The position numbers were made by a program, and so were the translations under genes. A stretch of DNA of 64,000 nt from Pristiophorus japonicus (Eukaryota), in contig NC_091993.1 in the NCBI RefSeq assembly GCF_044704955.1, positions 117,490,001 to 117,554,000 of the forward strand, read 5' to 3'. Below are positions 1,766 through 55,404 of this stretch, piece by piece. Under the pieces are notes generated by a model. That model saw only the letters and a list, made by a program, of their open reading frames with translations, made no database searches and had not been told where the DNA came from. Positions within the stretch are counted from its first letter, which is position 1. Each line of letters begins with the position of its first letter.

Positions 1766-1769
1766 TGAA

Positions 1770-28063: not shown

Positions 28064-28100
28064 ATGTGGATTCTGATTCTTCTCATGTGTTCCCGGCCCG
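28064..28100 (+). CDS. Exon 1 (signal peptide, MWILILLMCSRP) of CD300/pIgR-like (MDIR-type) Ig receptor
   Basis: ATG at 28064, hydrophobic run, strong donor G|GTGAGT at 28101, phase 1. Splices in frame to exon 2 to give MWILILLMCSRPVSGA-LWA. Confidence 0.85.
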
Positions 28101-28859
28101 GTGAGTGACATTCAGAGCGGGATATTCAGATAATCAGTGTTAGTTTGAGTCTAGTGTACGGTTCATGCAGCAGCGATGTTTAAATACTTGTAGACATGTA
28201 AAGGCACAAGATACTCAGCAAAAATATACAATGTATAATATTTGTGTGAAGTCTTGTAATCTCTTTTTGACTGCACTATATTGTACCACACACATATTTA
28301 CCAATATATACTAAACTGCATTATTTATTGTGAATGGAAAATAAAGGGTGCATTTAATTTTTTTTAAAGCTACACGAGTAACATAATCAAGATGCAAAGG
28401 ACACCCATTTTAATCTGTAAAAAGTGATTTTTACTGTAGTCTGATGTCCAATATACACTGAAGACTGCAGTGGTAATAATCCCTCACACAGAACATGTCT
28501 GGAGCTTGCAATTGTTTCTGTTATTTAAAGTACAGCTGATGAAGTATTGCTTTATGAGGCTCTGTCAGTGACACTGTTTCTCACTGCTAGAGGCTGGGTC
28601 TATATTAAGCAACCATTTCCTTCTCACTCTTTAACTCGAAACAAGTAAATTTAGCTTTTTCACTCCCGCCCCATATTAACCTAACGGTATTATGCTATAA
28701 TGGAAGATTGGATTAATACTGCCACCTCTCCTCCATTTATGACGAATCTTTATTCCCAGCAATGCTGAACTCCCAGTCTCACCCTACCCTAAGCCACGAC
28801 AGTTAATTCTATTGCATCAAACCTCCCCATGAAGATTTGTGTCTCCAGCTTACCAATTT

Positions 28860-29250
28860 TACGCAGAATACTTTATGAACTTCTGTACATGCAACTGACG
28901 CGAGCCTCTGTCTGTTTGGCATCTTCCTCTTTTCAGTCCTTCCTCTTTCTGATCTGATCTCATTTACCTCCCCGATTCCACCTTTTATCTTTCCTATCTC
29001 CTTTTCCCTATCAGCTCTTCTCTCTGCCTCTTCACATTTTTAACCTCCCTCCGCCATTTTAGTGTAAACTCTTTCCCCACAGCACGAGCTGCTCTCCCAG
29101 CAAGGACATTGGTCTAATAACTGTTCAACTAAAGTCCCCCCGTTCTTAACAGGCCGCTCCTCTTCCAGAACTGGCCCCAATGTGCCAGGAATCTGAACCC
29201 TTTTCTTCCAAACCATCTCTCTAGACAAAGAATCACGTCCCTTATCTCAT
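28860..29250 (-). mobile_element. Decayed CR1 ORF1/ORF2 junction fragment in intron 1
   Basis: Reverse strand resembles the GFRFLGHW...LYK region and ORF2 start of the other CR1 copies. Confidence 0.55.
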
Positions 29251-29254
29251 TATT

Positions 29255-32200
29255 TTCTCTCTCTCTCTCTCTCCCCCCCCGCCCCACCACTATTCTCTCT
29301 CCCCACGATGTCTCTCTCTCTCACTCTCCCTTCTCCCACTCTCCCTCCCTTCCCCACCATCTCTCGCTCTCTCACCCCTCCCCCACTCTCTCTCTCTCAA
29401 CCCCACCCTTCTTCTCTTTCTCCCTTCCACCCTCTCCTCTTTCTCTCTCCTCCCCGTCTCTCTCTCTCCCCCTTAGTCTCTCTCTGTCTTCCCCTGTCTC
29501 TCGTTTGCCCTATCTCTCTGTCTCTGTCTCATCCGTCCCTCTCTCTCTCTCCCCCCGACCCCGTCTCTCTCCACCTCATCCCTCCCCCGCTTCTCGCTCT
29601 CTCTCCCCAGTCTCTCTCTCACTCTGCCATCCTCCCTCATCTCTCTCTCTCCCTCTCTCTCTCCCACCAGTCTCTCTCTTGCCCGGTCTCTCTCTTACCC
29701 CCATCTCATTCTCTCTTCGCACCCCCCCATCATTCGCTCTCTTCTCCCCCCATCTCTCTCTCTCTCACTAACTCATCTCTCTCTCTCCCCGCCCCATCCT
29801 CCACCCACGTATCTCTCTCTGTTTGCCCTCAATCTCTCTCTCCCCCCTTTCATCTCTCTGTCCGCCCCTCTCAATCTCGCTCCCCTGCCCCTCCTCTCTC
29901 GCTCCCCCTTCCTCCTCTCATCTCTCTTTCCGCCCAATCTCCCCCCCCGCCCCCTCTGCCTCTTTCTCTCTCTTCTCCCCCTCCTCTCTCACTCTCTCTC
30001 CCTCCCTCTACTGTCCCTGTTCCCCGTTTCTCTGTCTCTCTCGCCCCCTCTCTCTCTCTTCCCCCCTCTCTTATCTCTCTCACCCCGTGGCTCTATCTCT
30101 CCCATCTCTCTCCCCCCTTTTCTCTCTCCCCTCTCTCTCACCACCCCCCCCCCCAAGTCTTGCTCCTCCCAGTCTCTCTATCTCTCCTTCCAGTCTCTCT
30201 CTTCCCCACCCCCCCATCTCTCTCTTTCACCCCCCTTCTCCCTCTCTCTATCTTTCCCCCCCATCTTTCTCTCTTCCCCCATCTTTCTCTCTTCCCCCCA
30301 TCTTTCTCTCTTCCCCCATCTCTCTCTCCCCTCCATGTCTCTCTCTCTCTCTCTTACCCCCCCACTTTTCGCTTCCCCCATCTCTCTCTCTTCCTCCCTG
30401 ACTCTCTCTCTCTCTCTCTCTCACACCGCTCCACCCCCCAGTCTCTCTCTCTCTTTCTCTGCTCCCAGTCTCTCTCCCCCTGCTCGCATATCTCTCTCTC
30501 GCCCCCTTTCATTTTACTCGACCCCCCCCTTGCTCTTCCCCTACCCCAACCCCGCCAATCTCTCTCTCCCCCCCGTCTCTCTCTCCCCCTTCCCTGCTCC
30601 CTCTCTCTCTCTCCCTCACCCCAGTCTCTCTCGTCCATGGGTTTCTCTCTTTCTTCCCCCCCATCTCTTTCTTTCCCCCCGTCTCTCTCTCTTCTCCCTC
30701 CCCCTGTCTCTCTCTCTCTCTTCCCCCCTGTCTCCCTCTCTCTTAGACCCCCGTCTCTCTCTCACCCGATCCCCCCCAGTCCCTCTCTCCCCCCCATGTC
30801 TCTCTCTTCACCCCATCTTTCTCTCCCCCCCGCCACCCCCCGTCTTTTACTTCCCCACCCACCGCTCCCCACCGGTCTCCCTCTCCCTCTGTCCCCAGTC
30901 TCTCTCTCTCCCTGCTGTCATATTCTCGCTCCCTCCCTTTCATTTTACTCAACCCCCTCCCCCCGCCGTGTCTTGCTCCCCCCAGTCTCTCTATCTCTCT
31001 TCCCCCCCCATCTCCCTCTCCCCATCATCTCTTTGTCTCTGCCCCACGTCTCTCTCTGTCTCTCTCCCCCTTCTCCTCTCTCTTCCCCGTTTATCTATCT
31101 GTCCCCGCAGACTCTACCAACCCCCCATGTCTCTCTCCCCCACCACCCCCCCCACTGAGGTGAATGATCAGCCATGATCTTATTGAATGGTGGTGCAGGC
31201 TCAAAGGGCCGAATGGCCTACTCCTGCACCTATTTTCTTTGTTTCTATATTTCCACTCTCTTTCTCCCCCCCCCCCCCCCCCCCACATCTCACTGTCTCT
31301 GATCCGTGTGTCTCTGGCTCTTCCCGCTTCTCCACACTCTCTCCCCACATTCTCCTCTCTCTCTAACTTGCCTCCATGTCTCTCTTCTCACCGTCTATCT
31401 CTACCCCCCCACCCCCCCGCCCCGTCTCTCTCTCAATTCCAACCCCCCAGATCTCTCTCTCTTCCCCCCTCCCCTGTCTATCCCTATCTCACCCCCACCC
31501 AGTCTCTCTCTTCCCCGCCGGCCCTCGCTCTCCCCCCGCTCTTTCTCTTCCCCCTCTCATCTCTCTCTCCACCCTCTCCCCCCGACTCCCTCTCTCTCTC
31601 TACCACTCCTTTCTCACTCTCTCTCCCTTCATCTACTCTTTCTGTCCGCCCTGCTTCTCTGTCTCTCTCTCCCCCCTCCTCTCTCTCTCTCTTCCCCCCT
31701 CTCTTATTTCCCACCTTTCCCTTTGTGTGTCTCTCTCTCACCCTTCTCTCTCCCCCCTTTCCTCTTTCTCTCCCCTACCCATATCTTTCTCCACCGTCTC
31801 TCTTTCTCTCTTCCCCTGTCTCTCTCTCCCCCTTGTCTCTCTCCCCTGTCTCTCTCTCTCTTACTCTCTCTCCCCCTCTCCTATCTCTCTCCCCCTTTCT
31901 CTCTTGCCCCTCTCCTCTTTCTTTCTCCCCCCCACCCCGTGTCTTGCACCCCCCAATCTCTCTATCTCTCTCTTCCCCCATCTCTCTGCCCCATGTCTCT
32001 CTCTCTCTCCCCTGTCTCTCTATCACGCCCCCGAATCTCTCTCTTCGCCCCCACCCCGTGTCTCACTCGTTCTCTTCCCCCCATCTTTCCCTTTTCCCCA
32101 CATCTCTCTCTCTTTCCCCCGTGTCTCTTGCTCTCTTGCCCCCCGCCTAACCTGGTGTCTCCCCTCTCATATCTAGTTCACACTCACCCCCTCTCACCTA

Positions 32201-32585
32201 TCTCTCTCCCTCCCTTTCATTTCTCTCTCCCCCCTTCTCTCTCTCTCTCTCCCACCCGTCGCCCTCTCTCCCGCCCGTCTCTCACTCTCTCTCTCCCTCT
32301 CCCCTTCTCTCTCTCGCCCCAGTCTCTCTGTCTCACCACCGTGTTTCTCTCTCTTCCCCCCTCGTCTCTCACTCTCTCTTCCCCCCCATCTCTCTCTCAA
32401 ACCCCCTCTCCGTCTCTCTCTCTCTCTCTCTCTCTCTCCCATCCCCCGTCTCCCTCTCTCTCTCTCCGCTCCTCCCCTCCGTCTCCCCTCTATCCCCCAT
32501 CTGCCATTTCTCTCTCTTCCCCCCTCTCTTCTCTCCCCACCCCCCCCCAACCACCCCCTCCCCCCGCCCCGTCTCTCTCTCTCCC
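29255..32585. repeat. C/T-rich low-complexity tract, left part
   Basis: Degenerate (TC)n/Cn blocks, strongly purine-depleted on the + strand. Confidence 0.95.
31155..31250 (+). mobile_element. Isolated CR1 3'-tail insertion within the C/T tract
   Basis: gatcagccatgatcttattgaatggtggtgcaggctc...ctactcctgcacctattttc matches the CR1 3' ends elsewhere in the window. Confidence 0.85.
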
Positions 32586-35500
32586 TGTAATGTATATAAT
32601 GACTCAAAATACTTGTTACTCTAAACTCACTCGGGTACAAACCTGGTTCAGCTTTATTTGCACCCAAAGTGCCACATGACATGATACTCGCCCTTATGTA
32701 CCAGGGACCATGCACACGCGCACACAGCCCGATGACCTCCAACAGTGGCACCCCCTGGTGTCTGGTGACCCCAAGTATCAATACGTAACAACATCCCCTT
32801 CAAGATCTTAGTATCAGTCTCTTTACAAATTAAGACGGACTGGGGCTCTTCGCTCATGAGTTGATCACCTCAGTTCAACTCCAGTTCTGGGCAAGCGTTC
32901 TGAGACAGTTATGACTGGAGGCTGAGTAATTAATCTGATGGGAGCGGTAATGACCCTATCAGAGACTGAAAGTCCAGATACAGTCAGTAATGACAGTAGA
33001 GACTTCTGATAAATGAATATTGGTTGGTTGCTCACTGACTGCATCTTCCTCAACTGGTTCCGGTTCATCCGTGTGCCGCAGTTTTATCTGATCAACATGT
33101 TTCCTGCATGTTTGCCCATTCTTGAGCATGAAATAAACACTCTGTTACCCTCCTTGGCCGTAACAGTACCGGTGATCCATTTTGGACCATGACCATAATT
33201 CAGCACGTCAACTGGATCGTTGACAGAGATGTCATGTGACACAGCAGCAAGGTCATGATACCATTGCTGATTTTGCCGTCTATTTTCAACATGATCATTC
33301 AAATCAGGATGGACAAGAGAAAGCTTGGTCTTCAGACTTCTCTTCATCAGTAGTTCAGCATGTGAGGTAAGCGCGTGAGGTCTTGTCCTGTAACTAAGCA
33401 ATATACGTGACAAATGAGTCTGCAGTGAATCCTGAGTCACACATTTCATGCTTTGCTTGATCATTTGAACTGCACGCTCTGCTCGACCATTAGACGAAGG
33501 TTTGAATGGAGCAGACCTTTCATGTCTGATACCATTGAGTTTCATGAACTCCTGAAACTCAAGACGTGTGAAGCGAGATCCGTTATCGCTCACAACAATG
33601 TCAGGCAAACCATGAATAGCAAACATGACACGAAGGCTCTCAATAGTAGCTGTGGACATACTGGATGACATGATAATACACTCTATCCACTTCGAATATG
33701 CATCCACCAGAACAAAAATCATCTTTCCCTGGAAAGGGTCCGCAAAATCGATGTGTATCCTCGACCATGGTTTAAGTACTGCTGGTACTTTACTTAGCTG
33801 CATGCACGTATTGCACTGATGCACACATGATTCCAGATCAGAGTCAATTCCAGGCCACCAAACATGAGCCCTGGCAATGGCTTTCATCATGACTATGTAG
33901 TTCATGTACAAATTTTTCTCTGCCTTTCTTAGGCATAACAACACGATTGCCCCACAGTAGACAATCTGACTGAATGGATAGTTCACCTTTGCGACGGTTG
34001 TAAGGTTTGGTCTCATCACACATTTCCATAGGTATTGCAGACCAATCACCATTGAGGACACAATGTTTCACAACCAATAAAATAGGATCATGGCTGGTCC
34101 AGATCCTCACTTGTTGAGCAGTGACAGGAGTTCCTTCACTCTCAAAAGCATCCATTACCAACAGGAGATCTGCAGGTTGAGGCGTCTCCACTTGAAGTGT
34201 GAGCAACAGCAGACGACTCAGTGTATCGGCACAGTTCTCAGTGCCAGGTCTATGATGAATAACATAATCATAGGCAGACAATGTCAACGCCCACCTCTGG
34301 ATACAGGACGATGCATTGGTGTTAATACATTTGTTTTCCGAAAACAATGAAATGAGTGGCTTGTGATCCGTTTTGAGTTCAAAACGAAGACCAAGCAGGT
34401 ACTGATACATCTTTTTGACCCCATACACACAGGCCAAAGCTTTTTCTACCATGCAGTAAGCTCTTTCTGCCTTTGACAAACTTTTTGAAGCATACACAAC
34501 AAGTTGTAGCTTACCTGACTCATTTGCTTTTTGTAGTACACAGCCAACCCCATATGATAAAGCATCACCGGCCAATACAAGACGCTTACACGGATCATAG
34601 TGAACAAGCAGCTTGTTCGAACAGAGCAAATTCTTGGCTTTCTCAAAAGCTCTATCTTGAGATACACCCCAGGCCCAGTTGTCACCTTTTCTGAGCAGCA
34701 TGTGCAGTGGCTCTAATAAAGTGCTCAATCTGGGTAAGAAATTACCGAAGTAGTTGAGTAGTCCAAGGAATGAACGCAGCTCTGTCACATTCTGAGGTCT
34801 GGGTGCATTTTTGATGGCCTTGGTTTTCGAATCAGTAGGTCTGATGCCATCAGCAGCAATTTTCCTCCCCAGGAATTCAACTTCAGGTGCCATGAAGACA
34901 CACTTTGAACGTTTCAGCCTGAGTGCCACTTTGTCCAGACGATGTAGGGCTTCTTCAAGATTGTTCAGATGTTCAGCAGTATCGCGACCCATGACCAGAA
35001 TGTCATCTTGAAACACGACGGTTCTAGGAATGGACTTCAGTAGACTCTCCATGTTCCTCTGAAATATGGTTGCAGCCGAACGGATTGCAAAAGGACACCT
35101 GTTGTAGACAACAAGTCCTTCATGGGTGTTGATGCAGATGATGCAGTTTCTTTGAAGTGTCGACAAGCTCCTGCGTCATATAGGCCAGCATCAGATCCAG
35201 TTTCGTGAATGACTTTCCACCAGCTAGCGTGGCGAACAGGTCATCAGCCTTTGGTAGCGGATACTGATCCTGTTTCGGAAATTGGTTAATCGTAACCTTG
35301 TAGTCTCCACAGATTCTGACAGTGCCATCACTCTTTAACACATAAACAATAGGATTGGCCCATTTGTTAAATTCGACCTGCGATATGACCCCTTCATGTT
35401 GGAGTCTGTTAAGCTCAATTTCGACCTTCCCCCTCATCATGTACAGAACAGACTGAGCTTTATGATAGACAGGTCTTGCATCAGAATCCAGGTGAATCTG

Positions 35501-37009
35501 CACCTTGGCTCCAGTAAAATTGCCAATGCCCTGTTCAAACAAAGAAGGAAACTTCTTCAGCACTTGAGCACACCAAGTGTCATCCACACTTTGATATCAT
35601 TCCAGATCCACTTGATTTTCTCAAGGCAATTCCTGCCGAACAGCGTTGGACCATTGTCTGGGACGATCCATAATGGTAAGTCGTGAACCACACCATCATA
35701 CGACACCTTGACTATGCACTGCATATGAGTTCCTTAGTGTAGGTACGCAACTTGGCATTGACTGGACTCAGCTTAGGCTTCACAGCCTCAGTGCCCCACA
35801 GCTTGTCGAATGTTCTTTGGCTCATTATCGACTGACTCGCACCCATGTCCAGCTCCATTGCTACAGGCACGCCATTAGCTTAACATTAACGATTATCGGC
35901 TGGCTCTTTCCCAAGGATGAAAACAGACCATACACTTCCTCCTCGGCTTGTGTATCCGAACCAGCACTGGACTGGTCATCATCAGCAATGTGATTAGCGG
36001 CACCACGTCTGCTTAGTTCTCTGAAGATGCCCCATTTTTGAACAGCCTTTCCAGATGTACTGTTTAAACTGACACTGATGAGGCCGATGATTGCCCCCAC
36101 AACGCCAACAGGGTGAAATCGGATTCGTACCAGTTGGCTGACTTTGAGCAGCTACAGGTTTCACATAAGCAGTCGAATAGGCCCTGCCATAAGCAGCTCT
36201 GTCAGACGACGACACAATCTTGTTTACAGTACTTGCCGTGGAGCTCCAACTCTTCAATGATATCTGCCTTAAATTATCATCAGTTGCCATTCATGCCTGG
36301 GCAGTCGTGATGGCCTTGCTCAAATCCAGCGTTTCTGCAGCCAATATTTTCCGAAGGATCACACCATGGTTGATGCCTATCACAAAGAAATCTCACAGCT
36401 TGTTTTCCAACACGTTTCCGAATTTACACGCCTCAGCGAGACGTCTTAGATTGGCGACGAATCCCGACACATCCAGACCCTCATCACGAACATGTGGGTA
36501 GAAGCGATAGCGTGAGATGATGATCCCCTCTTTTGGCTTTAGATGTTCACACACCAGAGCGCACAAATCCCCATACTCTTTGTCCGTTGGACGTGCAGGC
36601 GAGAAGATTCTTTGAGGTCATAAATTTTTGGACCACAAACGGTGAGGAAAACTGCCCTGCGCCTAACTGCGTCACCAGCTTCCTCCATTTTGTTGGCCAC
36701 GAAATACTGATCCAGGCAGTCGATAGAATCCGCCTAATCCTCACCATCCACGAATCTCTCCAGAATTCCAATGGTACCCATTGTGCATGCGAAGATTCTT
36801 AAATTATCTCGTCGCCAAATGTAATGTATATAATGACTCAAAAGAGTTGTTACTGTAAACTCACTCAGATGCAAACTTGGTTCAACTTTATTCGCGCCCA
36901 AAGTGCCACATGACATGGTAATCACTCTTATACACCAGGGCTTGCGCATATGCGCATACAGCCCGATGACCTCCGACAGTAGCGCCCCCTGGTGCCTGGT
37001 GACATAACA
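32586..37009 (-). mobile_element. Full-length degenerate Gypsy (Mag-like) LTR retrotransposon
   Basis: LTRs at 32586-32790 and 36820-37009 (TG...CA), 5-bp TSD CTCCC on both sides, PBS TGGCGACGAG next to the 5' LTR, PPT GAAGGGGATGT. Gag zinc knuckle CWRCGGNHRPHQC, protease remnant ELDMGA, RT FQDD, RNase H, integrase (IHIDFA, VSDNG, SNGRAER). Frameshifts and stops throughout. Confidence 0.95.
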
Positions 37010-39695
37010 CTCCCCCCCCCCCCCCCCACCCCCATCTCACTCTCTCTCCTCTTCCCCATCTCGCTCTCTCTCCTCCATTGCTCTCTCCCTCACACACTCA
37101 TCTCTCTCTCGCCCTCCCGCTCTCTCTTCCCCACCCCACATCTCTTTGTCTCTGGCCCCCGTGTCTCTCTCTCTCACCCCTTCTCCTCTCTCTTTCCCCC
37201 CCCCCCTCGCCCCGTGTCTCTCTCTCTCTCCTCCCCACATCTCGCTCTCTGTCCTCCATCTCTCTCTCTCCCTCCCATCCTGATCTCTCTCTCGCCCCTC
37301 TCTCTCTCCCTACCTCTCTCTCTCCAACCCCGCCCCCCATCTCTCTGTCTCTGGCCCCCATATCTTTCTTTTGCCTCTTCTCCTCTCTCCCTCTCCCCCC
37401 CCCCAGCCCCCGTCTCTCTCTCACCCCGGCTCTCCCTTCCCCCCCCCCCATCCCCGTCTCCCCCCCCCTAGCGTCTCTCTCTCTCTCTCTTCCCCCTCCC
37501 CATCTCTCTTTTCCCCCCTCCCGTCTCCATCTCCTTCCCACCCCCATCCCGCTCTCTCTCCTCAGTCTCTCCCTCACTCTCCCCCCCTCATCTCTCTCTC
37601 TCCCAACTGTCTCTGCCTCCCATCTCTCTCTCACCCTTCTCCTCTCACTTTCCCCCCCCCCCACCCCCGTGTCTCTCTCTCTCTCTCTCTGTCCCTAGTC
37701 TCTCTCTTCCATCCACTCATATCTTTCTCGCTGCCCCGCAACCTCTCTCCCCTCCACTCATTTCTCTCTCCGCCCCCTCTCCTTTCTCTCTTCCCCCACC
37801 TGCCCCCGTCTCTCTCTCTCTCTCTCTTCCCCCTCTCATCTCCCTCTCTATTCCCTCCCTTGCTCTCCCCCCTCTACTCTCTCTCTCCCACCTTCTCCCA
37901 TCTGTCTCTCTCTCTCCCCGCCAGTCTCCACCACCGCCCCCCCCGTCTCTCTCTCTCCCCAATGTCTCTCTCTCTCTCTCTCCCCTCCCGTCTCTCACTC
38001 TCTCCCACCCTCCCATCTCTCTCTCCACACCTCTCTCTCTTCCCCCTCCTCTAACATTGTCCCCTGTCTCTCCCTCTTCTCCTCTCTTTCAGTCCCCCTC
38101 TCCCTCCGTCTCTCTCTCTCTCTTCCCCCCCAGTCTCTCTCTTCCCCCCATCTCTCTCTCTTCCCCCATCTCTCCCCCCTCCGTCTCTCTTAGTTCCACC
38201 CATTCCCGCACCAAACCCCCCCCCCCCACCGGCTCTCTCTCCCTCCCTCTTCCCCCAGTATCTCTCTTTCCCCTGCCTCCCTCTATCCCCTGCCCCTCTC
38301 CCTCATCCCTCTCTCACCCCATCTCATCTCTCTCTCCCCTCCTCCACCCCCCATCTCTCTCCCCCTCTACCCCCATCTTCCCCCCACCACCCCCGTATCG
38401 CTCTCCCACCCCCATCTTTCTTTCCCTGCTCCTCCTGTCTCTCCCTCTCTGCTCCATCCTGTCTCTCTCTCTCTCTCCCCCTTCCACCCCGCCCAATCCT
38501 CTTCCTCCCCCCCGACTCTCTCTCTCTCTCTCTCTCCACCCGCCATGCCCCACGCTCCCCGCCCCGGTCTCGCTCTCTCTCCCCCTTGTCTCTCTCTCTC
38601 CCTCTTTCCCCCGTGTCTCTCTCTCTCTCTCTCCCCCCACGTCCCTGTCTCCCTACTCCCCGACCCCGGTGTTTCTCTCTTCCTCCCCCATGTCTCTCTC
38701 ACTCTCCCCCCATGTCACTCTCTCTGCCCCTCATCTCTCTCTCTTTCTCTCTCCACCAGTCTCTCTCCTTCTCTCTCCCCCAGTATCCCTCTCTCCCCCC
38801 GCCCCTCTGCCTCACTCTCCCTCCCACCTCTGTCTCTCTCTCTCGCTCCGACCCCTGTCTCATTCTCTCCCTCCCCTCCCGTCACTCTCTCCCTCCCCTC
38901 CCCTCCTGTTATTCTCTCCCTCCACCCCCACCACCGTTCTTTCTGTTCCTCCCCCACATTTCTCACTCCCCCATGTCGCTCTCTCTTTCCCCCCCCAGTC
39001 TCTCTCTCCCCCAGTCTGTCTCTCCTCCACCCTCCGTCTCACTCTCCCTCCCACCCGTCTCTCTCTCCCCCCCCCGCCCCCGTCTCTCATTCTCCCCCCC
39101 CACCATCTCTCTCCCCCCCCTTTCATCTCTCTCTCCCCACCTCGCAACTCTCGCTCCCTTCTCCTCTCTCTCCTCCCTTCTCCTCTCTTTCCCCCAAGTC
39201 TCTCTCTCTCTCTCTCCCCCAGTCTCTCTCTCTCTCCCCAGTCTCTCTCTCTCTCTCTCCCTCTCTACCCCAGTCTCTCTCTCTCTCTCCTCCCAGTCTC
39301 TCCCTCTCTCCCCCCGTCTCTCTCTCTCTCCCCCGTCTCTCTCTCTCTCCCCCCAGTCGCTCTCTCTCTCTCCCCTCAATCTCTCGATCTCTCCCCTCAG
39401 TCTCTCGATCTCTCCCCCCAGTCTCTCTCTCTCTCCCCCAGTCTCTCTCTCTCTCTCCCTCCCCCCTAGTTTATTTCGCCCCCCTCCCCAGCTACCCCCC
39501 CCCACCAATCCTGTCTGTCTCTCTCTCTCTCTCCCCGTCTCACTCTCTTCCCTCCGCCGCCCCCACCCGCCACTGTCTCTCTCTCTCTCTCATTGTCTTT
39601 CTCCCCCTCCTCTGTCTCCCCGTCTCTCTCTCTTACCACCCCAGTCTCTCTCTCTCTTGCTCGCCCCCCAGTATCCCTCTCTCTCTCTCCCACTC
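37010..39695. repeat. C/T-rich low-complexity tract, right part
   Basis: Same composition, resumes after the Gypsy element. Confidence 0.95.
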
Positions 39696-40051: not shown

Positions 40052-40375
40052 TTTCAGGTGCATTGTGGGCAAATAAACGAGTAAGAGGAATTGTGGGAAG
40101 AGCGATCACCATAGAATGTCACTATGACCAAAGGTACCGGTCACATGTGAAATATTGGTGTCAGGGCTGGACTCACCAATGCTCAGTTGTAGTAACAACA
40201 AATGATCAACATGGATGGGGAAGAAGAGTGTCAATCACAGATAACCAGACAGCAGGAATATTTGTTGTTACGATGAAGGACCTTCGCTCAGCAGATGCAG
40301 GATGGTACAGTTGTGGTATTACAGAATCAGGCAGCTTCGATAAACGTTTCAATATAGAGCTACAAATATCTCACG
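40052..40375 (+). CDS. Exon 2: V-type Ig domain of the CD300/pIgR/TREM class
   Basis: Acceptor tctcctcag, donor G|GTACGT, phase 1-1, 324 nt. Motifs: ITIECHY, KYWCQGWTHQC (extra Cx6C), RVSITDN..GIFVVTM.DL...DAGWYSCG. Confidence 0.93.
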
Positions 40376-43981: not shown

Positions 43982-44305
43982 AATCCGTGTCAGTTCCTGT
44001 ACTTAGATATTTATCGCCACCAAATGTCTCATGTTCTGGGGGCTTGGTGTCAGCCTCCTGTGAGTCTGTCCAGGGATCCCTTCCCATTCAGTACACATGG
44101 TATGAACAGACCCCGATTAAAGTTTCAAAGATCTCCGACACCAATAAACTGGATCTACATTGTCAATCCTTCAAACAGCAACATCATCAATATTACTGCA
44201 CAGCCTCAAATAATCAGGGAGAGAAATCCAGTGAAATGGTCGATGTGACAGTCTTCAACAGAGCAGGGAAGCACTGCAGTTATGTGACACAAATCAGTGG
44301 CATTG
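43982..44305 (+). CDS. Exon 3: C2-type Ig domain (FCRL/PECAM-like)
   Basis: Acceptor tttctttcccacag, donor G|GTAAGT, phase 1-1, 324 nt. Motifs: VSVPVL, CESVQGSLPIQYTWY, QYYCTASN..GEKSSEMV.VTV. Confidence 0.92.
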
Positions 44306-44325
44306 GTAAGTGTTACTTTAAACAA

Positions 44326-46665
44326 ACATAGAAACATAGAAAATAGGTGCAGGAGTAGGCCATTCGGCCTTTCGAGCCTGCACCGCCATTCAATGAGTTC
44401 ATGGCTGAACATGCAACTTCAGTACCCCATTCCTGCTTTCTCGCCATACCCCTTGATCCCCCTAGTAGTAAGGACCACATCTAACTCCTTTTTGAATATA
44501 TTTGGTGAATTGGCCTCAACAACTTTCTGTGATAGAGAATTCCACAGGTTCAACACTCTCTGGAGGAAGAAGTTTCTCCTCATCTCGGTCCTAAATGACT
44601 TACCCCTTATCCTTAGACTGTGACCCCTGGTTCAGGACTTCCCCAACATTGGGAACATTCTTCCTTCATCTAACCTGCCTAAATCCGTCAGAATTTTAAA
44701 CGTTTCTATGAAATCCCCTCTCATTCTTCTGAACGTCAGTGAATACAAGCCCAGTTGATCCAGTCTTTCTTGATATGTCAGTCCCGCCATCCCGGGAATC
44801 AGTTTGGTGAACCTTTGCTGCACTCCCTCAATAGCAAGAATGTCCTTCCTCAAGTTAGGAGACCAAAACTGTACACACTACTCCAGGTGTGGCCTCACCA
44901 AGGCCCTGTACAACTGTAGTAACACCTCCCTGCCCCTGTACTCAAATCCCCTCGCTATGAAGGCCAACATGCCATTTGCTTTCTTAACCGCATGCTGCAA
45001 CTGCATGCCAACCTTCAATGACTGATGTACCATGACACCCAGGTCTCGTTGCACCTCCCGTTTTCCTAATCTGTCACCATTCAGATAATAGTCTGTCTCT
45101 CTGTTTTTACCACCAAAGTAGATAACCTCACATTTATCCACATTATACTTCATCTGCCATGCATTTGCCCACTCACCTAACCCATCCAAATCACTCTGCA
45201 GCCTCATAGCATCCTCCTCGCAGCTCACACTGCCACCCAACTTAGTGTCATCTGCAAATTTGGAGATACTACATTTAATCCCCTCGTCTAAATCATTAAT
45301 GTACAATGTACACAGCTGGGGCCCCAGCACAGAACCTTGCGGTACCCCACTAGTCACTGCCTGCCATTCTGAAAAGTAACCATTTACTCCTACTCTTTGC
45401 TTTCTGTCTGCCACCAGTTCTCAATTCACATCAGCACACTACCCCCAATCCCATGTGCTTTAACTTTGCACATTAATCTCTTGTGTGGGACCTGGTCGAA
45501 AGCCTTCTGAAAGTCCAAATACATCACATCAACTGGTTCTTCCTTGTCCACTCTACTGGAAACATCCTCAAAAAATTCCAGAAGATTTATCAAGCATGAT
45601 TTCCCTTTCACAAATCCATGCTGACTTGGACCTATCATGTCACCTCTTTCCAAATGCGCAGCTATGACATCCTTAATAATTGATTCCATCATTTTACCCA
45701 CTACTGATGTCAGGCTGACCGGTCTATAATTCCCTGCTTTCTCTCTCCCTCCTTTTTTAAAAAGTGGGGTTACATTGGCTACCCTCCACACCATAGGAAC
45801 TGATCCAGAGTCAATGGAATGTTGGAAAATGACTGTCAATACATCGGCTATTTCCAAGGCCACCTCCTTAAGTACTCTGGGATGCAGTCCATCAGGCCCT
45901 GGGGATTTATCGGCCTTCAATCCCATCAATTTCCCCAACACAATTTCCCGACTAATAAGGATTTCCCTCAGTTCCTCCTTCTTACTAGACCCTCTGACCC
46001 CTTTTATATCCGGAAGATTGTTTGTGCCCTCCTTAGTGAATACCGAACCAAAGTACTTGTTCAATTGGTCTGCCATTTCTTTGTTCCCCGTTATGACTTC
46101 CCCTGATTCTGACTGCAGGGGACCTATGTTTGTCTTTGCTAACCTTTTTCTCTTTACATACCTATAGAAGCTTTTGCAGTACGTTTTAATGTTCCCTGCA
46201 CGCTTCCTCTCGTACTCTATTTTCCCTGCCCTAATCAAACCCTTTGTCCTCCTCTGCTGAGTTCTAAATTTCTCCCAGTCCCTGGGTTCGTTGCTATTTC
46301 TGGCCAATTTGTATGCCACTTCCTTGGCTTTAATACTATCCCTGATTTCCCTTAATAGCCACGGTTGAGCCACCTTCCCTTTTTTATTTTTACGCCAGAC
46401 AGGGATGTACAATTGTTGTAGTTCATCCATGCGATCTCTAAATGTCTGCCATTGCCCATCCACTGTCAACCCCTTAAGTATCATTCGCCAATCTATCCTA
46501 GCCAATTCACGCCTCATACCTTCAAAGTTACCCTTCTTTAAGTTCTGGATCATGGTCTCTGAATTAACTGTTTCATTCTCCATCCTAATGCAGAATTCCA
46601 CCATATTATGGTCACTCTTCCCCAAGGGGAACGAGATTGCTAATTAATCCTCTCTCATTACACAA
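44326..46665 (-). mobile_element. Young 5'-truncated CR1 LINE, same subfamily as 23029-25970
   Basis: ORFs 45426-46625 and 44878-45414 are nearly identical to those of the 23-26 kb copy. Confidence 0.95.
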
Positions 46666-47979: not shown

Positions 47980-50900
47980 AATGAGAATTCTGTGGGGAGA
48001 GGGTGAACAGCCAGAGGCCATGGTCCATATCGGTACCAATGACAGAGGTAGAAAGAAGGATGAAGTCATGCAGGCAGATTTCAGAGAGCAAGCAGAGAGG
48101 TTAAAAAGCAGGACCCCAAAGATAGTAATCGGCGGATTACTCCCGGTGCCACGTGCTAGTGAGTAAAGAAATCGGAGGATAGAGCAGATGATTGCGTGGC
48201 TGGAGAGATGGTGCACCAGGGAGGGCTTTAGGTTCCTGATCCATTGGGACCGTTTCCGGGGGAGGTGGGACCTGTACACCTCAATAGAACCGGGACCAAT
48301 ATCCTCGCGGGGGGGAGCGGGCGGGAGCGGGCGGTGGTATATTGCTAGTGCTGTTGGGAAGGAGTTAATCTAGATTGGCGGGGGATGGGAAGCTGGGAAT
48401 AAATTCAGAAGGAAGAGAAGCAAAGCTGGAATTGGAAAGCAGAAAAGTAGAAAGTGAATTTGGAAGGCAGAGGAAACAATGGCTAGAAAATAGACAACAA
48501 GGGAGTTTGGTAGTGCTAAATGGTATATATTTCAATGCAAGGAGTCTGGGGAATAAGGCAGATGAGCTGAGAGCACAGATAGACACTTGGGAGTAGGATG
48601 TTATAGCTATTTCTGAGACATGGCTGAAAGAAGCGAAGGTATGGCAGCTCAACATTCCTAGTTACAGGGTTTTCAGATGGGATAGAGAGGGGGATAAAGA
48701 GAAGGGGGGGGATCGCAGTATTGATTAAAGAAACAATTACACCTGTGAGGAACGATGATTTGTTAGCAGGATTATCAAATGAGGCCATGTGGGTTAAATT
48801 GAACAACAAAAAAGTGGCGCTCACACTGCTGGGAGTGTACTATTGACCCACAGTCAGAGGATGATCGAAGAGCAAACATGCAAGCAGATTTCTGAGTATT
48901 GCAAAAACTATAGGGCTGCAATAGTAGGGGATTTCAACTGCCCTAATATTAACTGGGATAACATTAGTGTGAAAGTTATACAGGGTGCGGAATTCCTAAA
49001 ATGCATTCAGGGGAACTTTTTTAGCCAGTATGTAGCAAGCCCAACAAGGGAGGGGGCGGTTTTGGACTTAGTTTTAGGGAATGAAGCCTGCAGATAGAAG
49101 GTGTATCAATGGAAGAGTATTTTGGTGCTAGTGATCATAATTCAGATAGATTTAGGGTAGTTATGGAAAAGGACAAGATAGACCAGGAATAAAAGTGCTC
49201 AATTGGGGAAAAGCCAATTTTGTTATGTTGAGATGGTATTTAGCCAAAGTAGACTGGGAACAGCTATTTGAAGGTAAATCAGTGTCAGAGCAGTGGGAGA
49301 CATTCAAGGAGGAGATCCTGAATGTTCAGAGCAAGTATGTTCCCTTCAAGAAAAAAGGTGGGACTAATCTAGAGCCTCCTGGGTGTCATGGGGCATACAG
49401 GGTAGGAGAAAGGAAAAAAAGGGAGGCATGTGACAGATACCAAGGACTCAAAACTTCAGAAACTCTAGAGAAGTATAGTAAGTGCAGGGGTGAAATTAAA
49501 AAGGAAATTAGGAAAGCAAAGAGAGAGAATGAAAACATTTTGGCAAGTAAATTCAAGGAAAACCCAAATATTTTTCATAAATACATTAACAGCAAGAGGA
49601 TAACTAAAGAAAAAGTAGGGCCCATTAGAAACAAAAAGGTAATCTGTGTGTGGAGTCAGATGTGTGTAGGGTTCTTAATGAATACTTTGCATCTGTTTTC
49701 ACAAAAGAAAGAGGTGATGCAGACATTGCAATGAGGGAGAAGGAACATGAAATATTGGATGAAATAAACATAGCGAGAGAGGAAGTATTAAGGGGTTTAG
49801 CAGCTTTGAAAGTGGATAAGTCCCCAGGCCCGGATGAAATGTGTGCCAGGCTGTTGAGAAGCAAAAGAGGAAATAGCAGAGGCTTTGACCATCATTTTCC
49901 AAACCTCTCTGGCAACAGGTGTGGTGCCTGATGACTGGAGGACTGCTAATGTTGTACCTCTGTTTAAAAAAAGGAGAAAGGGATAGACTGAGTAATTACA
50001 GGCCAGTCAGCTGAACCTCCGTGGTGGCAAAATTATTGGAAAAAATGGTGTGGGACAGGATAAATCTTCATTTAGAAACACACAGATTAATCAAGGACAG
50101 GCAGCATGGATGTTTTAAGGGAAGGTCGTGTCTGACTAACTTGATTGCATTTTTTGAGGAGGTAACAAGGAGGTTCGATGAGGGTAGCACGTTTGATGTA
50201 GTGTCTATGGATTTTAGCAAGGCTTTTGATAAGTTCCCACATGGCAGACTGGTTACAAAATTAAAAGCCCATGGGACCAAGGCAAAGTGGCAAGTTGGAT
50301 CCAAAATTGGCACAGAGGCAGGAAGCAAAGGGTAATGGTTGGTGGGTGTTTTTGTGACTGGAAGGCTGTTTCCAGTGGATTTCCACAGGGCTCAGTACTA
50401 GGTCCCTTGCTTTTTGTAGTATATATCAATGATTTAGACTTGAATGTAGAGTGTATGATTAAGAAGTTTGCAGATGATACAAAAATTGGCTGTGGGGTTG
50501 ATAATGAAGAAAGCTGTAGACTGCAGGAAGATATCATTGAACTGGTGGACAGAACAGTGACAAATGGAATTCAATCCGGAGAAGTGTGAGGCATTTCGGG
50601 AGGAGTAACAAGACAAGAGAATACACATTAAATGGTGGGACACTGAGAAGTGTAGAGGAACAAAGGGACCTTGGAGTGCAGGTCCACAGGTTCCTGAAAG
50701 TAGCAAGTTCGATAGATAAGGTGCGAAGAAGCCATTCGGAATACTTGCCTTCATTAGCCGAGGCATAGAATACAAGAGTAGGGAGGTTATGCTTGAACTG
50801 TATAAAACACTAGTTAGGCCACAGCTAGAGTACTACGTGCAGTTCTGGTCACCACATTACAGGAAAGATGTGATTGCACTGGACAGGGTACAGAAGAGAT

Positions 50901-51356
50901 TTACGAGGATGTTGCCTGGACTGGAGAATTTTAGCTATGAGGAAAGATTGGATAGGCTGGGATTGTTTTCTTTGAGGATGAGAGGAGATCTTATTGAGGT
51001 GTATAAAATTATGACGGACCTACATAAAGTGGATAGGAAGGACCTATGTCCCTTAGCAGAGGGGTCACTAACCACGGGGCATAGATTTAAAGTAATTGGT
51101 AGGATGTTTAGAGGGGAAATGTTTTCACACAGGATAGTGGGGGTTTGGAACTCACTGCCTGAAAGGGTGGGAGAGGCAGAAACCCTCACCACATTTAAAA
51201 GATACTTGGGCGTATACTTCGAGCGCCGTAACCTACAGAGCCATGGACCGCAAGCTGGAAAATGGGATTAGGCTGGATAGTGGGATTAGGCTGGATAACT
51301 AGTTGTGGGCCAAAATGGCCTCCTCCTGTGCTGTAAATTTCTATGATTCTATTCTA
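47980..51356 (+). mobile_element. CR1 LINE (ORF1 end, endonuclease, RT, tail), degenerate, in intron 3
   Basis: HIGTND (ORF1), YFNARSL and VGDFN (APE endonuclease), then RT as in 1-1765. Confidence 0.92.
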
Positions 51357-51872
51357 TGAATGGGTCAAGTTAAGAAACAAAAGATGAGTCTAGATAGGGT
51401 GTAAATGGAGATGGCAGAATCATCAACAGCTGCTGTGAGAAAGAGAAAAAACATTAAAAAATTAAAAAATAGAGGCAGTTATTATAGTTTGAAATTGTTG
51501 AACTCGATGTTGAGTTCAGAAGGGTGTAAAGTGCCTAAACGAAATATGAGGTGCTATTCCTCGAGCTTGCCTTGAGATTCATTAGAACAGTGCAAGGGGC
51601 CCTTTAACTGCCACAACAGTAACTCTGTACCACCAACTCTCAGATATGGAAAAAAAACGGAAATTATCGGTAAAAATGGGTCACAGCCCAGTGTCAGCAG
51701 CCTCTCCTTGCTACCGGAGAAGGGGAAATTACACAGAAATTTAATCATCCAAATCCATTATATCAACCAGGCTTTTACATAAGTAACAAGGTTCCATTTG
51801 ACAATCGTGCTCTCTTGGTTGACTACAAATGAAAATTAGGTGAATCTAAATATTATTTTGTTGTTTCAATAG

Positions 51873-51993
51873 GACTTGAATATTCTTGTGAAGTTTTTTC
51901 AACTGTATCACCAACAACTGCACATTCGACAAGTACAAATGTTATTTCCACTGATAATCAAAAACAATCTTCAGGATCCAAATCCACTAAAAG
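51873..51993 (+). CDS. Exon 4: Ser/Thr-rich stalk (GLEYSCEVFSTVSPTTAHSTSTNVISTDNQKQSSGSKSTK)
   Basis: Acceptor ttgtttcaatag, donor AG|GTACAA, phase 1-2, open frame, mucin-like composition. Confidence 0.85.
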
Positions 51994-53531
51994 GTACAAT
52001 GTTCTCATTGTTGATGTTTTGACTGGCATTGCCTCCATCTGAGAGATTAAATATTCTTTAATAGTTTTGGCATAAGGGTTGATAATCATTTATTATTTTG
52101 GAATGTTGCTCATCAGAATGGAAATGGTGGCTGGGTTTACATCATGCTGCTGTGTTAGCTTCCTAATGAAGGTCCTGTCTTTGTTGGTAGGAAATAAGCA
52201 CCTCCATTTTGCTGCCCCTCAGATGGTGCTCTTTGCATTATTCACCATGATTACTTCACCACTAACCTACTCTCATGGTTTGTGATGAGTTGCACTTATC
52301 AAACTTACCTTGCCGATATCTGTTCTGGTGTGGGGCTGACAGTAAAGTTTCTGTTGGTGAAAGTGAGCAATAGCAGCAATATATCTGCACCGCCCTTGAT
52401 ATCACCAGTAAGCAACATCTTATAGCTTTGGTCCAATTCTCAGTGTCGCTCACTACAACTGCAGGAATTTTCTTCTCTTAAAATGTATTATTGGGAGGTG
52501 GGCAATGCTGACAAGGTTACATTTATTGCCTGTCACGAGTTACCCTGAGAAGGTGGCGCTGGGCCGCCTTCTTGATCTGCTGATCAATGCTGGTAAATAA
52601 GAAACTCCAGGATTTTGATCTAACAACAATGAAGAAACAGCAGTCTATTTCCAAGCCAGAACCGCGTGTAACTTAGAGGAGGTGGTGTTGGCATGATGTT
52701 GCTTGCCTTGATGGTACAGACCACTGGGCTCAGTGGTGATTTTAAGTTAAGCTGGGCAAGTTGTTTTTAATAGATTATCAGGATGTGGGTATTGCTGCAG
52801 TGTGTCCTGTAGATGGTGCATACTGTAGCCACCGTGCGCCAGTGGTGGAGGGGATGGATTTTGAGCTTAGCAGCAGGGGCACTGACCATATGCATTGCTT
52901 TGTCTTAAATAGTGGTGAACCTCAGTGTTATTACAGCTGCACCCATCCAAGGTGAGTACTCCATCACACTCCAGGCTTGAGCACTGCAGATGATGGAGAG
53001 GCTCGGAGTGATCAGGGGCTGAGCCACTTGTTGCAGAGTACCCAGCCTCTTCCCTGCTGTTGTAGCCACAATGTTGGCGTGGCTGGTCCAGTTAAACTTC
53101 TGGCCATTTTAATTCAGTGCTTGAAGGAGGTTTTCTCCAATTCATATTCTGTGGCAAATATTTCACCCAATGTATAGGAATGTAAATACTTTTCCCTCCT
53201 CTGCTTATCTAGTTTCCCCATAAATGCCTCTGTACTATTTGCTGCAACTACTCCCTGTGGTAGCAAGTTCCACGTTCTCACCACCTTACAGCCATATATT
53301 GTGCACATGTTAATGAAGTTTGCTTCATTTGATCTTTATCTAATGATCACAAAGTTGACTTTCCTTCATAAGGCAAACACTAGTTTACTTTCCCAGCTAA
53401 CGTCCCTTGGCTCTGCAGCTTTACATTGATGCACTATACTAAGATTACAGTGTAACCAGACGATAAATGTTTCAAACACACAGAAGACTCGTTTCCTTCG
53501 AATTATTTTATATTTCTTCCCTTTTGCTCAG

Positions 53532-53622
53532 TTACATTACATGGAACGTGGGACGCTGGCTGCTCTTTGCTCTCCTGGTGATTTGTACTATTTCAGTCAC
53601 AAGGTGTACGAGAAAATCTAAG
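53532..53622 (+). CDS. Exon 5: transmembrane exon (SYITWNVGRWLLFALLVICTISVTRCTRKSK) with intramembrane Arg
   Basis: Long pyrimidine tract ending ttttgctcag, phase 2 in, donor AAG|GTAGGG phase 0. Hydrophobic helix followed by a basic stop-transfer stretch. Confidence 0.87.
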
Positions 53623-55258
53623 GTAGGGATTAGGGACTTTATGTGAATCACTCCATCAATTTGTTCAAAAATATTGATCGCAGATACTATAAAGAAAAAC
53701 TTGCATTGATATAAACCCTTTCATATTTTCGACGTGACAAGCGCTTTATCTCTAATTGGTGTCACTGGGGTAACTTACTAACTTCATAGTGTCGGCGATA
53801 ATTCTGAGGGGCAGATCCCCCTCCCGTTCTAGAGCATGAATTGTGCGCATGGGAGCAGGAAATTACATGAGGACATAGACAGACTAAATGAGTGGGCAAA
53901 GCTATGGCAAGTGATGTTCAACATGGGGGAGTGTGAGATCATCCCCTTTGGATCAGAGGAACACAAATTGGAATATATTCTCAATGATGAGAGACTAGAA
54001 GATGTGAAGGAGTAAAGAGATTTAGATGTCCATGTACACACGTCACTGAAAGCTAGGGCACAAGTGCAAAAAGTAATCAAAAAGGCTCATGGAAAGTTGG
54101 CCTTCATTTTATGGGGATTGGAATTCAAAATTGAAGAAGTGATGTTTCTGTTGTACAGAGCCTTGGTCAGACCCCACCTGGAGTTCTGTGTTCAGTTTCG
54201 GGCACCAAACCTCAGGAAAGAAATACTGGCCTTGGAAGGAGTGTAGTGCAAATTCACCAGACTGATACTAGGGCTTAAAGTGTTCAATTATAAGGAGAGA
54301 TTACGTAAACTTGGTTGTATTCCCTAGAGTTTAGAAGGTTGAGGGCTGAAAGAATCAAAGAATTTAAAATTATTAAGGGATTCGATAGACTAGATAGGGA
54401 GAAATGACTTGCTTGGTGGGGGAATCCTCATAAGGGGGCATAATCTAAAAATTAGAGCTAAACCATTTAGGAGTAGAATTAGGAAGCACTTTTTCCCAAA
54501 AAGGGTTGTGGGAACCTGGAACTGGCTGTGGATGCAGGGCCAATTGAAATTTTCACAGCTGAGATCACTAGATATTTGTTGGGTAAGGACATCAAAGGGT
54601 ATGGATCAAAGGCGGGTAAATGGAGTTGTGCCACTGATCAGCTGTGATCCAGTTATACAGTGGAACAGGCTCAAAGGGTTGAATGGGCTGCTTCTGTTGC
54701 TTTGTTCCTATGTAACCTGCCCGTTATAGAATCCCCCGACTTTCATTCTATTGATATAAAACAGTCGTTACAAGAAACGGAAGGGAAGAAATGGGAAAGG
54801 CTACAAGAAAGCACTTTGCTGTAGGGCACCAGAGACAATGGTTTTCACACAAGAACTGAGACAGTTAAACGTGTCCAGTCGAGCACCAAGGTGCTCAGAC
54901 ACAGACCCAATGCTATTGTTGCTGGGAACCTCGATTGGACTTTCGAAAATGTGTTTAACAAAGTAGACAAGTCAATCTTTTTCTGCTGTCAACTGTCCAC
55001 CATCTAAGCTGCAGGGAAACATTTGTTGCATGTGAGTAAATGGTGTTACATGTATTCAAGAGGGGCCCAACTAGCACCTTTTCCCATCACATGTGCAATA
55101 GTGATAGGGAAGGGAGGACTGTGATCTCAACACAGCTCCAGTCCATCACGAGCTTCTCCTCCATTTGTTGTCAGTTCCAGAATTCTGTTCTGACATGTAA
55201 AACAATGCATCATTCTCAGAATCAATGAATCTGATGCCTTAAATATTTTCTTTTTCAG

Positions 55259-55306
55259 TTACTCAATGAATCGGCTCGTCACAGCTTGACCAATGTGGTA
55301 AAGTGA
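55259..55306 (+). CDS. Exon 6: terminal coding exon, short cytoplasmic tail LLNESARHSLTNVVK*
   Basis: Acceptor ttttctttttcag, phase 0 matches exon 5, TGA at 55304-55306, AATAAA at 55405. Confidence 0.65.
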   Translation, partial: LLNESARHSLTNVVK

Positions 55307-55404
55307 TGATTCCCTGGTTACATCGACCTTGATGGAATATTGTGTCCTGATTAAACGTTCATTCTTCATCCAGCTTTGAATATTTATTTTTATCAATTGT
55401 AAAT

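What the first reader, a model, noticed from the sequence alone, without database searches (positions are those of the whole stretch)
28064..55306. Hidden intact six-exon activating-type immune receptor (V + C2 + stalk + Arg-TM)
Seen: six exons with canonical GT-AG sites and matching phases (1,1,1,2,0) join into a 314-aa ORF with no stops. Four of the exons are too short to appear in the ORF track. The TM segment YITWNVGRWLLFALLVICTISVT has an Arg near its N-terminal end, and the 22-aa tail has no Tyr, so no ITIM or ITAM. Established: an N-terminally placed TM Arg mediates FcR-gamma pairing in NKp46, GPVI, FcalphaRI, OSCAR and LILRA, whereas activating CD300/TREM proteins typically use a more central Lys with DAP12. 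CD300/pIgR-related multigene receptors (MDIRs) are known from skate. Inference: this is a cartilaginous-fish CD300/pIgR-like receptor that signals through FcR-gamma or a CD3zeta-like adaptor, probably uncharacterised.
Basis: partly seen in the sequence, partly recalled or inferred. Interest (0 to 1): 0.8.

Follow-up and report, generated by a model that had tools for sequence, protein, structure and literature searches.

The report
Shark MDIR receptor gene, Arg-transmembrane type
This is a real, intact and transcribed shark gene for a two-domain antibody-like surface receptor with a charged membrane anchor; it is one more member of the MDIR family of paired activating and inhibitory immune receptors, already described in skate, so it is sound but not new in kind.

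Summary
Six exons (28064-28100, 40052-40375, 43982-44305, 51873-51993, 53532-53622, 55259-55306) have GT-AG borders and phases 1,1,1,2,0, and give 945 nt (314 codons plus stop).

An RNA-derived contig with no mismatch crosses the V-to-C2 junction exactly as predicted. All six exons have counterparts at matching positions in annotated shark and ray proteins.

The gene belongs to the MDIR family (Cannon 2006). Its V, C2 and transmembrane exons are 58-67% identical to clearnose-skate MDIR2 and MDIR5, and MDIR5 carries the same Arg transmembrane module.

Among 70 relatives:
- 28 have this module, with Arg invariant and a median tail of 19 aa.
- 19 have an uncharged anchor and tails of about 100 aa; 15 of these carry ITIMs.

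The two types interleave on the ectodomain tree. That is a paired-receptor pattern and supports the "activating-type" reading.

Pairing with FcR-gamma or a zeta-like adaptor fits the published Arg and position rules but was not tested here. A 2014 survey found no FcR-gamma in sharks.

The gene lies in a tandem repeat of about 49.6 kb at 99.4% identity.

Verdict: new member of a known kind, modest interest. The scan had already noted an inhibitory paralog about 496 kb upstream in this genome.

The parts
28064..28100 (+). Exon 1: start codon and most of the signal peptide (12 codons plus 1 base, phase 1)
   Evidence: Sequence. 90% identical over 10 aa to the N-terminus of Carcharodon P0021. Ten homologs hit 28025-28099 by tblastn.
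40052..40375 (+). Exon 2: V-set Ig domain of CD300/pIgR type, with the extra YWC...C cysteine pair
   Evidence: Pfam V-set 1.1e-11. PDB matches: pIgR domains, CD300LF 6e-19, CD300A, NKp44, TREM2. 60% identical to skate MDIR2. Homologs reading ..PVSGALW.. favour acceptor 40052 over 40058.
43982..44305 (+). Exon 3: C2-type Ig domain, FCRL-like
   Evidence: Pfam Ig_C17orf99, Ig_2 and Ig_3. PDB: FCRL5 domains down to 9e-6, also FCRL4 and CD22. 76% identical to Carcharodon P0021 and 62% to MDIR5. RNA contig joint 40375|43982.
51873..51993 (+). Exon 4: Ser/Thr-rich stalk with a conserved EYSCE start
   Evidence: The only 121-nt phase 1-to-2 candidate with a good acceptor and homology. 69% identical over 35 aa to Heptranchias P0028 at the same position.
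53532..53622 (+). Exon 5: transmembrane segment with Arg, plus the start of the tail
   Evidence: 77% identical to Heptranchias P0028 and 67% to MDIR5. Motif W.V[GIL]RW present in 28 relatives.
53554..53556 (+). Arg codon (CGC) of the transmembrane segment
   Evidence: Arg is invariant in 25 distinct transmembrane sequences (24 relatives' plus the window's own). About the third transmembrane residue if the helix starts after the often-Lys position -3.
55259..55306 (+). Exon 6: last 15 codons and TGA
   Evidence: Resembles the C-terminal 13-14 aa of Heptranchias P0028 and Scyliorhinus canicula P0066 (weak E-values, but the position matches).
49597..64000 (.). Downstream copy of a tandem segmental repeat with period about 49.6 kb; it holds exons 4-6 of this gene
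   Evidence: Self-BLAST: 1-14410 equals 49597-64000 at 99.4%, with 76 mismatches and 4 gaps.
1..14410 (.). Upstream copy of the same repeat; it holds identical exons 4-6 (2282-2402, 3941-4031, 5670-5717) of the preceding gene copy

Best explanation
The window holds one complete copy of a tandemly repeated shark gene of the MDIR family. It encodes a type I membrane protein: signal peptide, a CD300/pIgR-type V domain, an FCRL-like C2 domain, an O-glycan-type stalk, a transmembrane helix with an invariant Arg about three residues in from the outer face, and a 22-aa tail without tyrosine. It is the 'activating' arm of a paired family whose 'inhibitory' arm has nearly the same ectodomains on an uncharged anchor with long ITIM tails. 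Shown here: the gene structure, its transcription, its family membership and the family-wide split. Inferred: the Arg docks onto the aspartate pair of a dimeric ITAM adaptor, so that ligand binding by the V/C2 ectodomain starts Syk/ZAP-70-type signalling. The residue type and depth point to an FcR-gamma/zeta-class adaptor. The ligand is unknown.
For: The gene model is intact. A contig with no mismatch gives the spliced joint 40375|43982. Every exon has a positional counterpart in annotated elasmobranch proteins. Identity to named skate MDIR2 and MDIR5 is 58-60% for V, 61-62% for C2 and 67% for the transmembrane exon. Of 70 relatives, 28 have the Arg anchor with a median tail of 19 aa and no real ITIM, and 19 have a plain anchor with tails of about 100 aa, 15 of them with ITIMs. 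Arg, the following Trp and Leu+7 are invariant across at least 13 shark and ray species. Arg and ITIM forms interleave on the C2 tree, with at least 6 switches forced by well-supported branches. Feng 2006 reports that FcR-gamma partners carry Arg in the N-terminal transmembrane segment (position 3 in Fc-alpha-RI) and DAP12 partners carry a central Lys.
Against: No adaptor was looked for or found here, and Akula 2014 reported no FcR-gamma homolog in shark data of that time. The Arg lies next to Trp residues and a polar position -3, so it could sit at the interface and not in the bilayer core. As I recall its abstract, the original MDIR paper listed MDIR5, which has this same anchor, among forms without characteristic signalling motifs; I could not open the paper. 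RNA support covers only one junction. Exons 4-6 are identical in two copies, so their use by this particular copy cannot be told apart.
Confidence: 0.65

Rival explanations
1. The Arg is only an interfacial or snorkelling residue. The receptor then does not signal through an adaptor and acts as a decoy, an adhesion or capture molecule, or a partner of another chain.
For: Trp at -4 and +1 and a polar or Lys residue at -3 suggest the Arg is close to the interface. In the window only 15 apolar residues follow the Arg. No adaptor is shown. FcR-gamma was reported absent from sharks in 2014.
Against: An extracellular-side positive charge kept invariant in 25 of 25 distinct sequences, and coupled strictly to short tails without motifs while the sister forms carry ITIMs, is the classic signature of adaptor use.
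Confidence: 0.2
2. It is activating but pairs with a DAP12/DAP10-class adaptor, not with FcR-gamma or zeta.
For: CD300, TREM and NKp44, which are the V domain's relatives, mostly use DAP12. If the helix starts at Ile-5, the Arg is at position 6-8 and so nearer the centre.
Against: Type I DAP12 partners carry Lys, and Lys-to-Arg cut assembly to 15% (Feng 2006). Here Arg is never replaced by Lys in 25 sequences.
Confidence: 0.12
3. The main products are not the membrane form. They would be soluble proteins made by read-through after exon 4, or V-less transcripts from an internal 5' exon.
For: Read-through after 51993 adds 16 aa that resemble the C-terminus of a whale-shark model without an anchor. 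23 of 70 relatives have no anchor. A contig joins 41499 to the C2 exon.
Against: Many models without an anchor look truncated. The internal exon has an in-frame stop and no ATG after it. The transmembrane and tail exons are conserved and intact in both copies.
Confidence: 0.1
4. The copy is a silent recent duplicate, or the duplication is an assembly artefact.
For: 99.4% identity over 14.4 kb, repeats included. Contigs with 3-4 differences show that another copy or allele is expressed.
Against: A contig with 0 mismatches over 309 nt matches this copy's V exon and junction. The 76 mismatches and 4 gaps argue for two real copies. Earlier notes place a further C2 exon about one period downstream.
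Confidence: 0.05

Closest known systems
MDIR (modular domain immune-type receptors) of the clearnose skate, especially MDIR5 (and MDIR2)
   Same: The same V and C2 domain types, at 58-62% identity. The same leader. MDIR5 has the same stalk start (EYSCE), the same ..W.VGRW.. anchor at 67% identity and a short tail. MDIR2 is the ITIM counterpart. Both are multigene families in elasmobranchs.
   Different: This protein has one V-C2 unit, whereas MDIR5 has two. It comes from a shark, not a skate. It lies in a near-identical tandem array of about 49.6 kb.
CD300 (CMRF35-like) family of mammals
   Same: The V domain has the extra cysteine pair (CD300LF E=6e-19). Both are paired families with activating and inhibitory members. 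NCBI names many orthologs 'CMRF35-like molecule'.
   Different: CD300 proteins have a single V domain and no C2 domain. Their activating members mostly use a central Lys or Glu, not an N-terminal Arg.
Polymeric Ig receptor (pIgR)
   Same: Best PDB match of the V exon, to domains D5, D4 and D1.
   Different: pIgR has 2-5 tandem V domains, no C2 domain, an uncharged anchor and a long sorting tail. None of this applies here.
FCRL proteins (FCRL5, FCRL4)
   Same: The C2 exon's best solved relatives, with per-domain E down to 9e-6.
   Different: FCRLs are chains of C2 domains with ITIM or ITAM-like tails and have no CD300-type V domain.
FcR-gamma-coupled receptors such as Fc-alpha-RI (functional analogy only)
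   Same: [quoted passage not shown]
   Different: The ectodomains are unrelated (LRC C2 domains) and the anchor sequence shows no shown homology. The resemblance is in how it may work, not in descent.

Membership tests
MDIR | Ig domains homologous to the named skate MDIR proteins | tested here: met
   V exon: 60% to MDIR2 (5e-45) and 58% to MDIR5. C2 exon: 62% to MDIR5 (1e-41) and 61% to MDIR2. Transmembrane exon: 67% to MDIR5 (1.5e-9). All.
MDIR | Modular ectodomain built from a CD300/pIgR/TREM-like domain and an FcR-homolog-like domain | tested here: met
   Relatives carry one to three V domains and zero to two C2 domains.
MDIR | Large multigene family in an elasmobranch | tested here: met
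   Tandem repeat in the window. Many paralogs per species among the 70 relatives. A paralog was noted 496 kb away (not checked by me).
MDIR | Members with a charged anchor and members with ITIM tails | tested here: met
   28 Arg-anchor forms against 19 plain-anchor forms, 15 of the latter with ITIMs.
CD300 | V-set domain with a second disulphide (YWC...C) | tested here: met
   Sequence and alignments to CD300LF and pIgR.
CD300 | Ectodomain of a single V domain | tested here: not met
   A C2 exon follows, and RNA joins it to the V exon.
CD300 | Orthology or synteny with the mammalian CD300 cluster | not testable with these tools
   No flanking single-copy genes lie in the window.
pIgR | Two or more tandem pIgR-type V domains | tested here: not met
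   Only one V exon in the gene. tblastn with 70 relatives finds no other V exon in the window.
pIgR | Long cytoplasmic tail with transcytosis signals | tested here: not met
   The tail is 22 aa.
FCRL | Chain of FCRL-type C2 domains with tyrosine-motif tails | tested here: not met
   One C2 domain behind a V domain, and no Tyr in the tail.
FcR-gamma-coupled activating receptors (functional class) | [quoted passage not shown] | tested here: met
   The rule is from Feng 2006.
FcR-gamma-coupled activating receptors (functional class) | Physical, Arg-dependent association with FcR-gamma or a zeta-family dimer | not testable with these tools
   This needs co-expression and co-precipitation.
FcR-gamma-coupled activating receptors (functional class) | The species has an FcR-gamma/zeta-type adaptor gene | not tested
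   The adaptor sequence could not be supplied to any tool. Akula 2014 found none in sharks using the data of that time.

The most novel reading that the evidence does not exclude
The invariant N-terminal Arg anchor shared by sharks and rays would mark an FcR-gamma/zeta-type Arg-Asp adaptor system already working in the common ancestor of elasmobranchs. That would make it older than the 'appeared with bony fish' picture of 2014. It would also make the MDIR5-type receptors, which I recall were first listed as lacking motifs, the activating arm of the family. The unusually conserved helix (R, W+1 and L+7 invariant) would then point to a dedicated partner chain.
Probability: 0.4. Interest if true: 0.5.

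Novelty: new member of a known kind. Interest (0 to 1): 0.3.

Why it matters
The gene gives a clean, expressed shark example of the activating arm of the MDIR family, which has had almost no follow-up since 2006. Only one paper in the held library mentions the family. It also shows that the Arg-anchor module and the ITIM module have been swapped repeatedly on near-identical ectodomains across sharks and rays. This makes one concrete question testable: which aspartate-bearing adaptor, if any, do cartilaginous fish use with such receptors, and how old is the Arg/FcR-gamma-type pairing? The ligand of the CD300/pIgR-like V domain in an animal with no known pIgR is also open.

Tried and rejected
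- **V exon word search.** It returned a single hit because of the length filter. I went on from that natural 184-aa manta protein, and then from a 305-aa skate protein, to reach full-length relatives.
- **Joined 314-aa model.** One script only counted its length and stops without printing it. Another script padded the exon-5 peptide by one neighbouring residue on each side to keep register.
- **More exons in the window.** tblastn with all 70 relatives found no second V or C2 exon, no plain-anchor exon and no ITIM-tail exon. An inhibitory splice form from this locus is therefore unsupported.
- **Internal 5' exon (41084-41499).** I checked it for coding potential. It has an in-frame stop and no ATG after it.
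- **MDIR sources.** The MDIR paper and a review by the same group are not held. What I say about MDIR1 to MDIR5 motifs beyond the sequences is from memory.
- **Shark adaptors in the literature.** Searches for FcR-gamma, DAP12 or CD3-zeta in sharks gave only the 2014 survey.
- Junctions 1-2, 3-4, 4-5 and 5-6 therefore have no direct RNA check.
- **Big representative search and structure prediction.** I did not use either, because the family assignment was already clear.
- **Pfam 'Imm53' hit on the V exon.** I disregarded it as spurious.
Full report
**Observation**

| Exon | Coordinates | Content |
|---|---|---|
| 1 | 28064-28100 | ATG and 12 codons of leader; donor gtgagt |
| 2 | 40052-40375 | V domain |
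| 3 | 43982-44305 | second Ig domain |
| 4 | 51873-51993 | Ser/Thr stalk |
| 5 | 53532-53622 | membrane anchor |
| 6 | 55259-55306 | 15 codons and TGA |

- All introns are GT..AG and have pyrimidine-rich acceptors.
- The phases are 1,1,1,2,0, and the sum is 945 nt with a single terminal stop.
An enumeration gave 362 phase-compatible AG..GT intervals between exons 3 and 5. So the open frame by itself would be weak evidence.
- The chosen interval is the only one of the required length that has both a good acceptor and homology to the stalks of relatives.
- The anchor peptide is as quoted. Its Arg codon is at 53554-53556, and the 22-aa tail has no tyrosine.
- A script only counted its length and stops.

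**RNA evidence**

- Only one public run (X1, kept as contigs) was offered.
- Laid on 39850-44700, it shows a joint from 40374 to 43981 with GT..AG ends. The tool notes that a cut one base further right fits equally well, which gives 40375|43982, exactly the predicted exon 2-exon 3 junction.
- The joint is carried by a 309-nt contig with no mismatch and depth 31. So the run contains spliced RNA of this copy.
- Another contig covering the C2 exon has three differences, so a second copy or allele is also expressed.
- The other four junctions could not be checked, because the reads tool allowed one call.

**Homology**

- The V exon matches Pfam V-set. In the PDB it matches pIgR domains, CD300LF (6e-19), CD300A, NKp44 and TREM2. 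It has the extra YWC...C cysteine pair of that group.
- The second Ig exon matches Ig_2, Ig_3 and Ig_C17orf99. In the PDB it matches FCRL5 domains (per-domain E down to 9e-6), FCRL4 and CD22.
- A word search with the V exon found one 184-aa manta-ray protein with the same leader, V domain, stalk and Arg anchor.
- Searching onward with that protein and with a 305-aa skate relative gave 70 elasmobranch proteins.
- Each window exon has a counterpart at the right place:
  - Leader: 90% identical to Carcharodon.
  - V domain: 62-68%.
  - C2 domain: 76% to Carcharodon.
  - Stalk 69%, anchor 77% and a similar 13-aa tail end in Heptranchias perlo.
  - The whole V-C2-stalk-Arg-anchor-15-aa-tail layout in a 304-aa Scyliorhinus canicula protein.
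- Homologs read ..PVSGALW.., which favours acceptor 40052 over the tandem acceptor at 40058.

**What it is**

- Two of the hits are the named skate proteins MDIR5 and MDIR2.
- The window's V, C2 and anchor exons are 58-60%, 61-62% and 67% identical to them. MDIR5 carries the same ..W.VGRW.. anchor and a short tail.
- The gene is therefore a shark member of the MDIR family of Cannon et al. 2006. That family is cited in PMC3031540 as a multigene family of activating and inhibitory receptors related to CD300, TREM, FCAR and pIgR.
- NCBI's automatic names for the orthologs do not reflect this. They include CMRF35-like molecule, pIgR-like, Fc receptor-like 6, CXADR-like and A33-like.

**How it probably works**

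Among the 70 relatives:
- 28 carry the Arg anchor, with a median tail of 19 aa and no genuine ITIM.
- 19 carry an uncharged anchor with tails of about 100 aa; 15 of these have ITIMs.
- 23 have no anchor; they are either truncated models or soluble forms.

Over 25 distinct anchor sequences (24 from relatives plus the window's own), from at least 13 shark and ray species:
- The Arg, the Trp after it and Leu+7 are invariant.
- Position -3 is often Lys. The helix therefore probably begins at about -2, which makes the Arg roughly the third residue.

On a tree of the membrane-proximal C2 domain, Arg and ITIM forms interleave. Well-supported branches force at least six switches, and there are close Arg/ITIM pairs within genera.

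This is the pattern of a paired receptor family with exchangeable signalling modules.

Feng et al. 2006 state the following:
- Type I DAP12 partners carry a central Lys.
- Exchanging the two residues cuts assembly strongly.

By that rule the module looks FcR-gamma/zeta-like. This remains an inference, for three reasons:
- No adaptor was examined.
- Akula et al. 2014 found no FcR-gamma, PIGR or FCRL homologs in the shark data of the time.
- The Trp-flanked Arg could be interfacial.

**Surroundings**

- Positions 1-14410 repeat 49597-64000 at 99.4%, with 76 mismatches and 4 gaps. The gene therefore sits in a tandem array with a period of about 49.6 kb.
- Identical exons 4-6 of the upstream copy lie at 2282-2402, 3941-4031 and 5670-5717.
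- tblastn with all relatives finds no further Ig, plain-anchor or ITIM exon in the window.
- The 12-kb first intron holds CT-rich low-complexity blocks and an LTR-retroelement pol remnant. The long third intron holds LINE fragments.
- Earlier notes of this scan call the genome Japanese sawshark and report an ITIM-bearing two-V paralog 496 kb upstream. I did not verify either point.

**Verdict**

This is a new member of a described family, and its adaptor and ligand are still unknown.

Noticed in passing
window 41084-41499 (+), joint 41499|43982: A second spliced form in run X1 joins an exon inside intron 2 (donor gtgagt after 41499) to the C2 exon at depth 9. Its frame into exon 3 has a stop at 41475-41477 and no ATG after it, so it looks like a non-coding or V-less transcript. 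It may come from a paralog, since the contig has 4 mismatches.
   Followed up: partly
window 51994-52041 (+): Reading through the exon 4 donor adds 16 codons and a stop. This extension resembles the C-terminus of a whale-shark relative that has no anchor (P0069), which hints at a conserved soluble isoform made by intron retention.
   Followed up: partly
window 1-14410 and 49597-64000: A tandem segmental repeat with period about 49.6 kb at 99.4% identity, transposon copies included. It is either very young or homogenised. It runs off the window end, so the copy number is unknown.
   Followed up: partly
window about 29300-32700 and 36990-39800 (+): Two CT-rich low-complexity blocks of several kb in intron 1 (GC skew down to -0.78). 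They give very long spurious Ser/Leu/Pro ORFs and flank a retroelement remnant.
   Followed up: no
window 33087-35587 (-): An LTR-retroelement pol remnant (RT, RNase H, integrase by Pfam) inside intron 1.
   Followed up: yes
window 40050-40058 (+): Tandem acceptors six bases apart (cag|TTTCAG|G). Homologs fit the upstream one. Using the other would delete two residues at the signal-peptide end.
   Followed up: partly
window 28025-28063 (+): The 5' untranslated stretch just before the ATG, read in frame, resembles the N-terminal extension of the Scyliorhinus torazame model P0067. That model probably starts too early.
   Followed up: no
relatives P0001-P0070 (anchor module): The Arg anchor is far more conserved than adaptor docking alone should require: W-4, V-2, R, W+1, F+4, L+6, L+7 and K+22 are nearly fixed from sharks to rays. 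This suggests extra packing constraints.
   Followed up: partly
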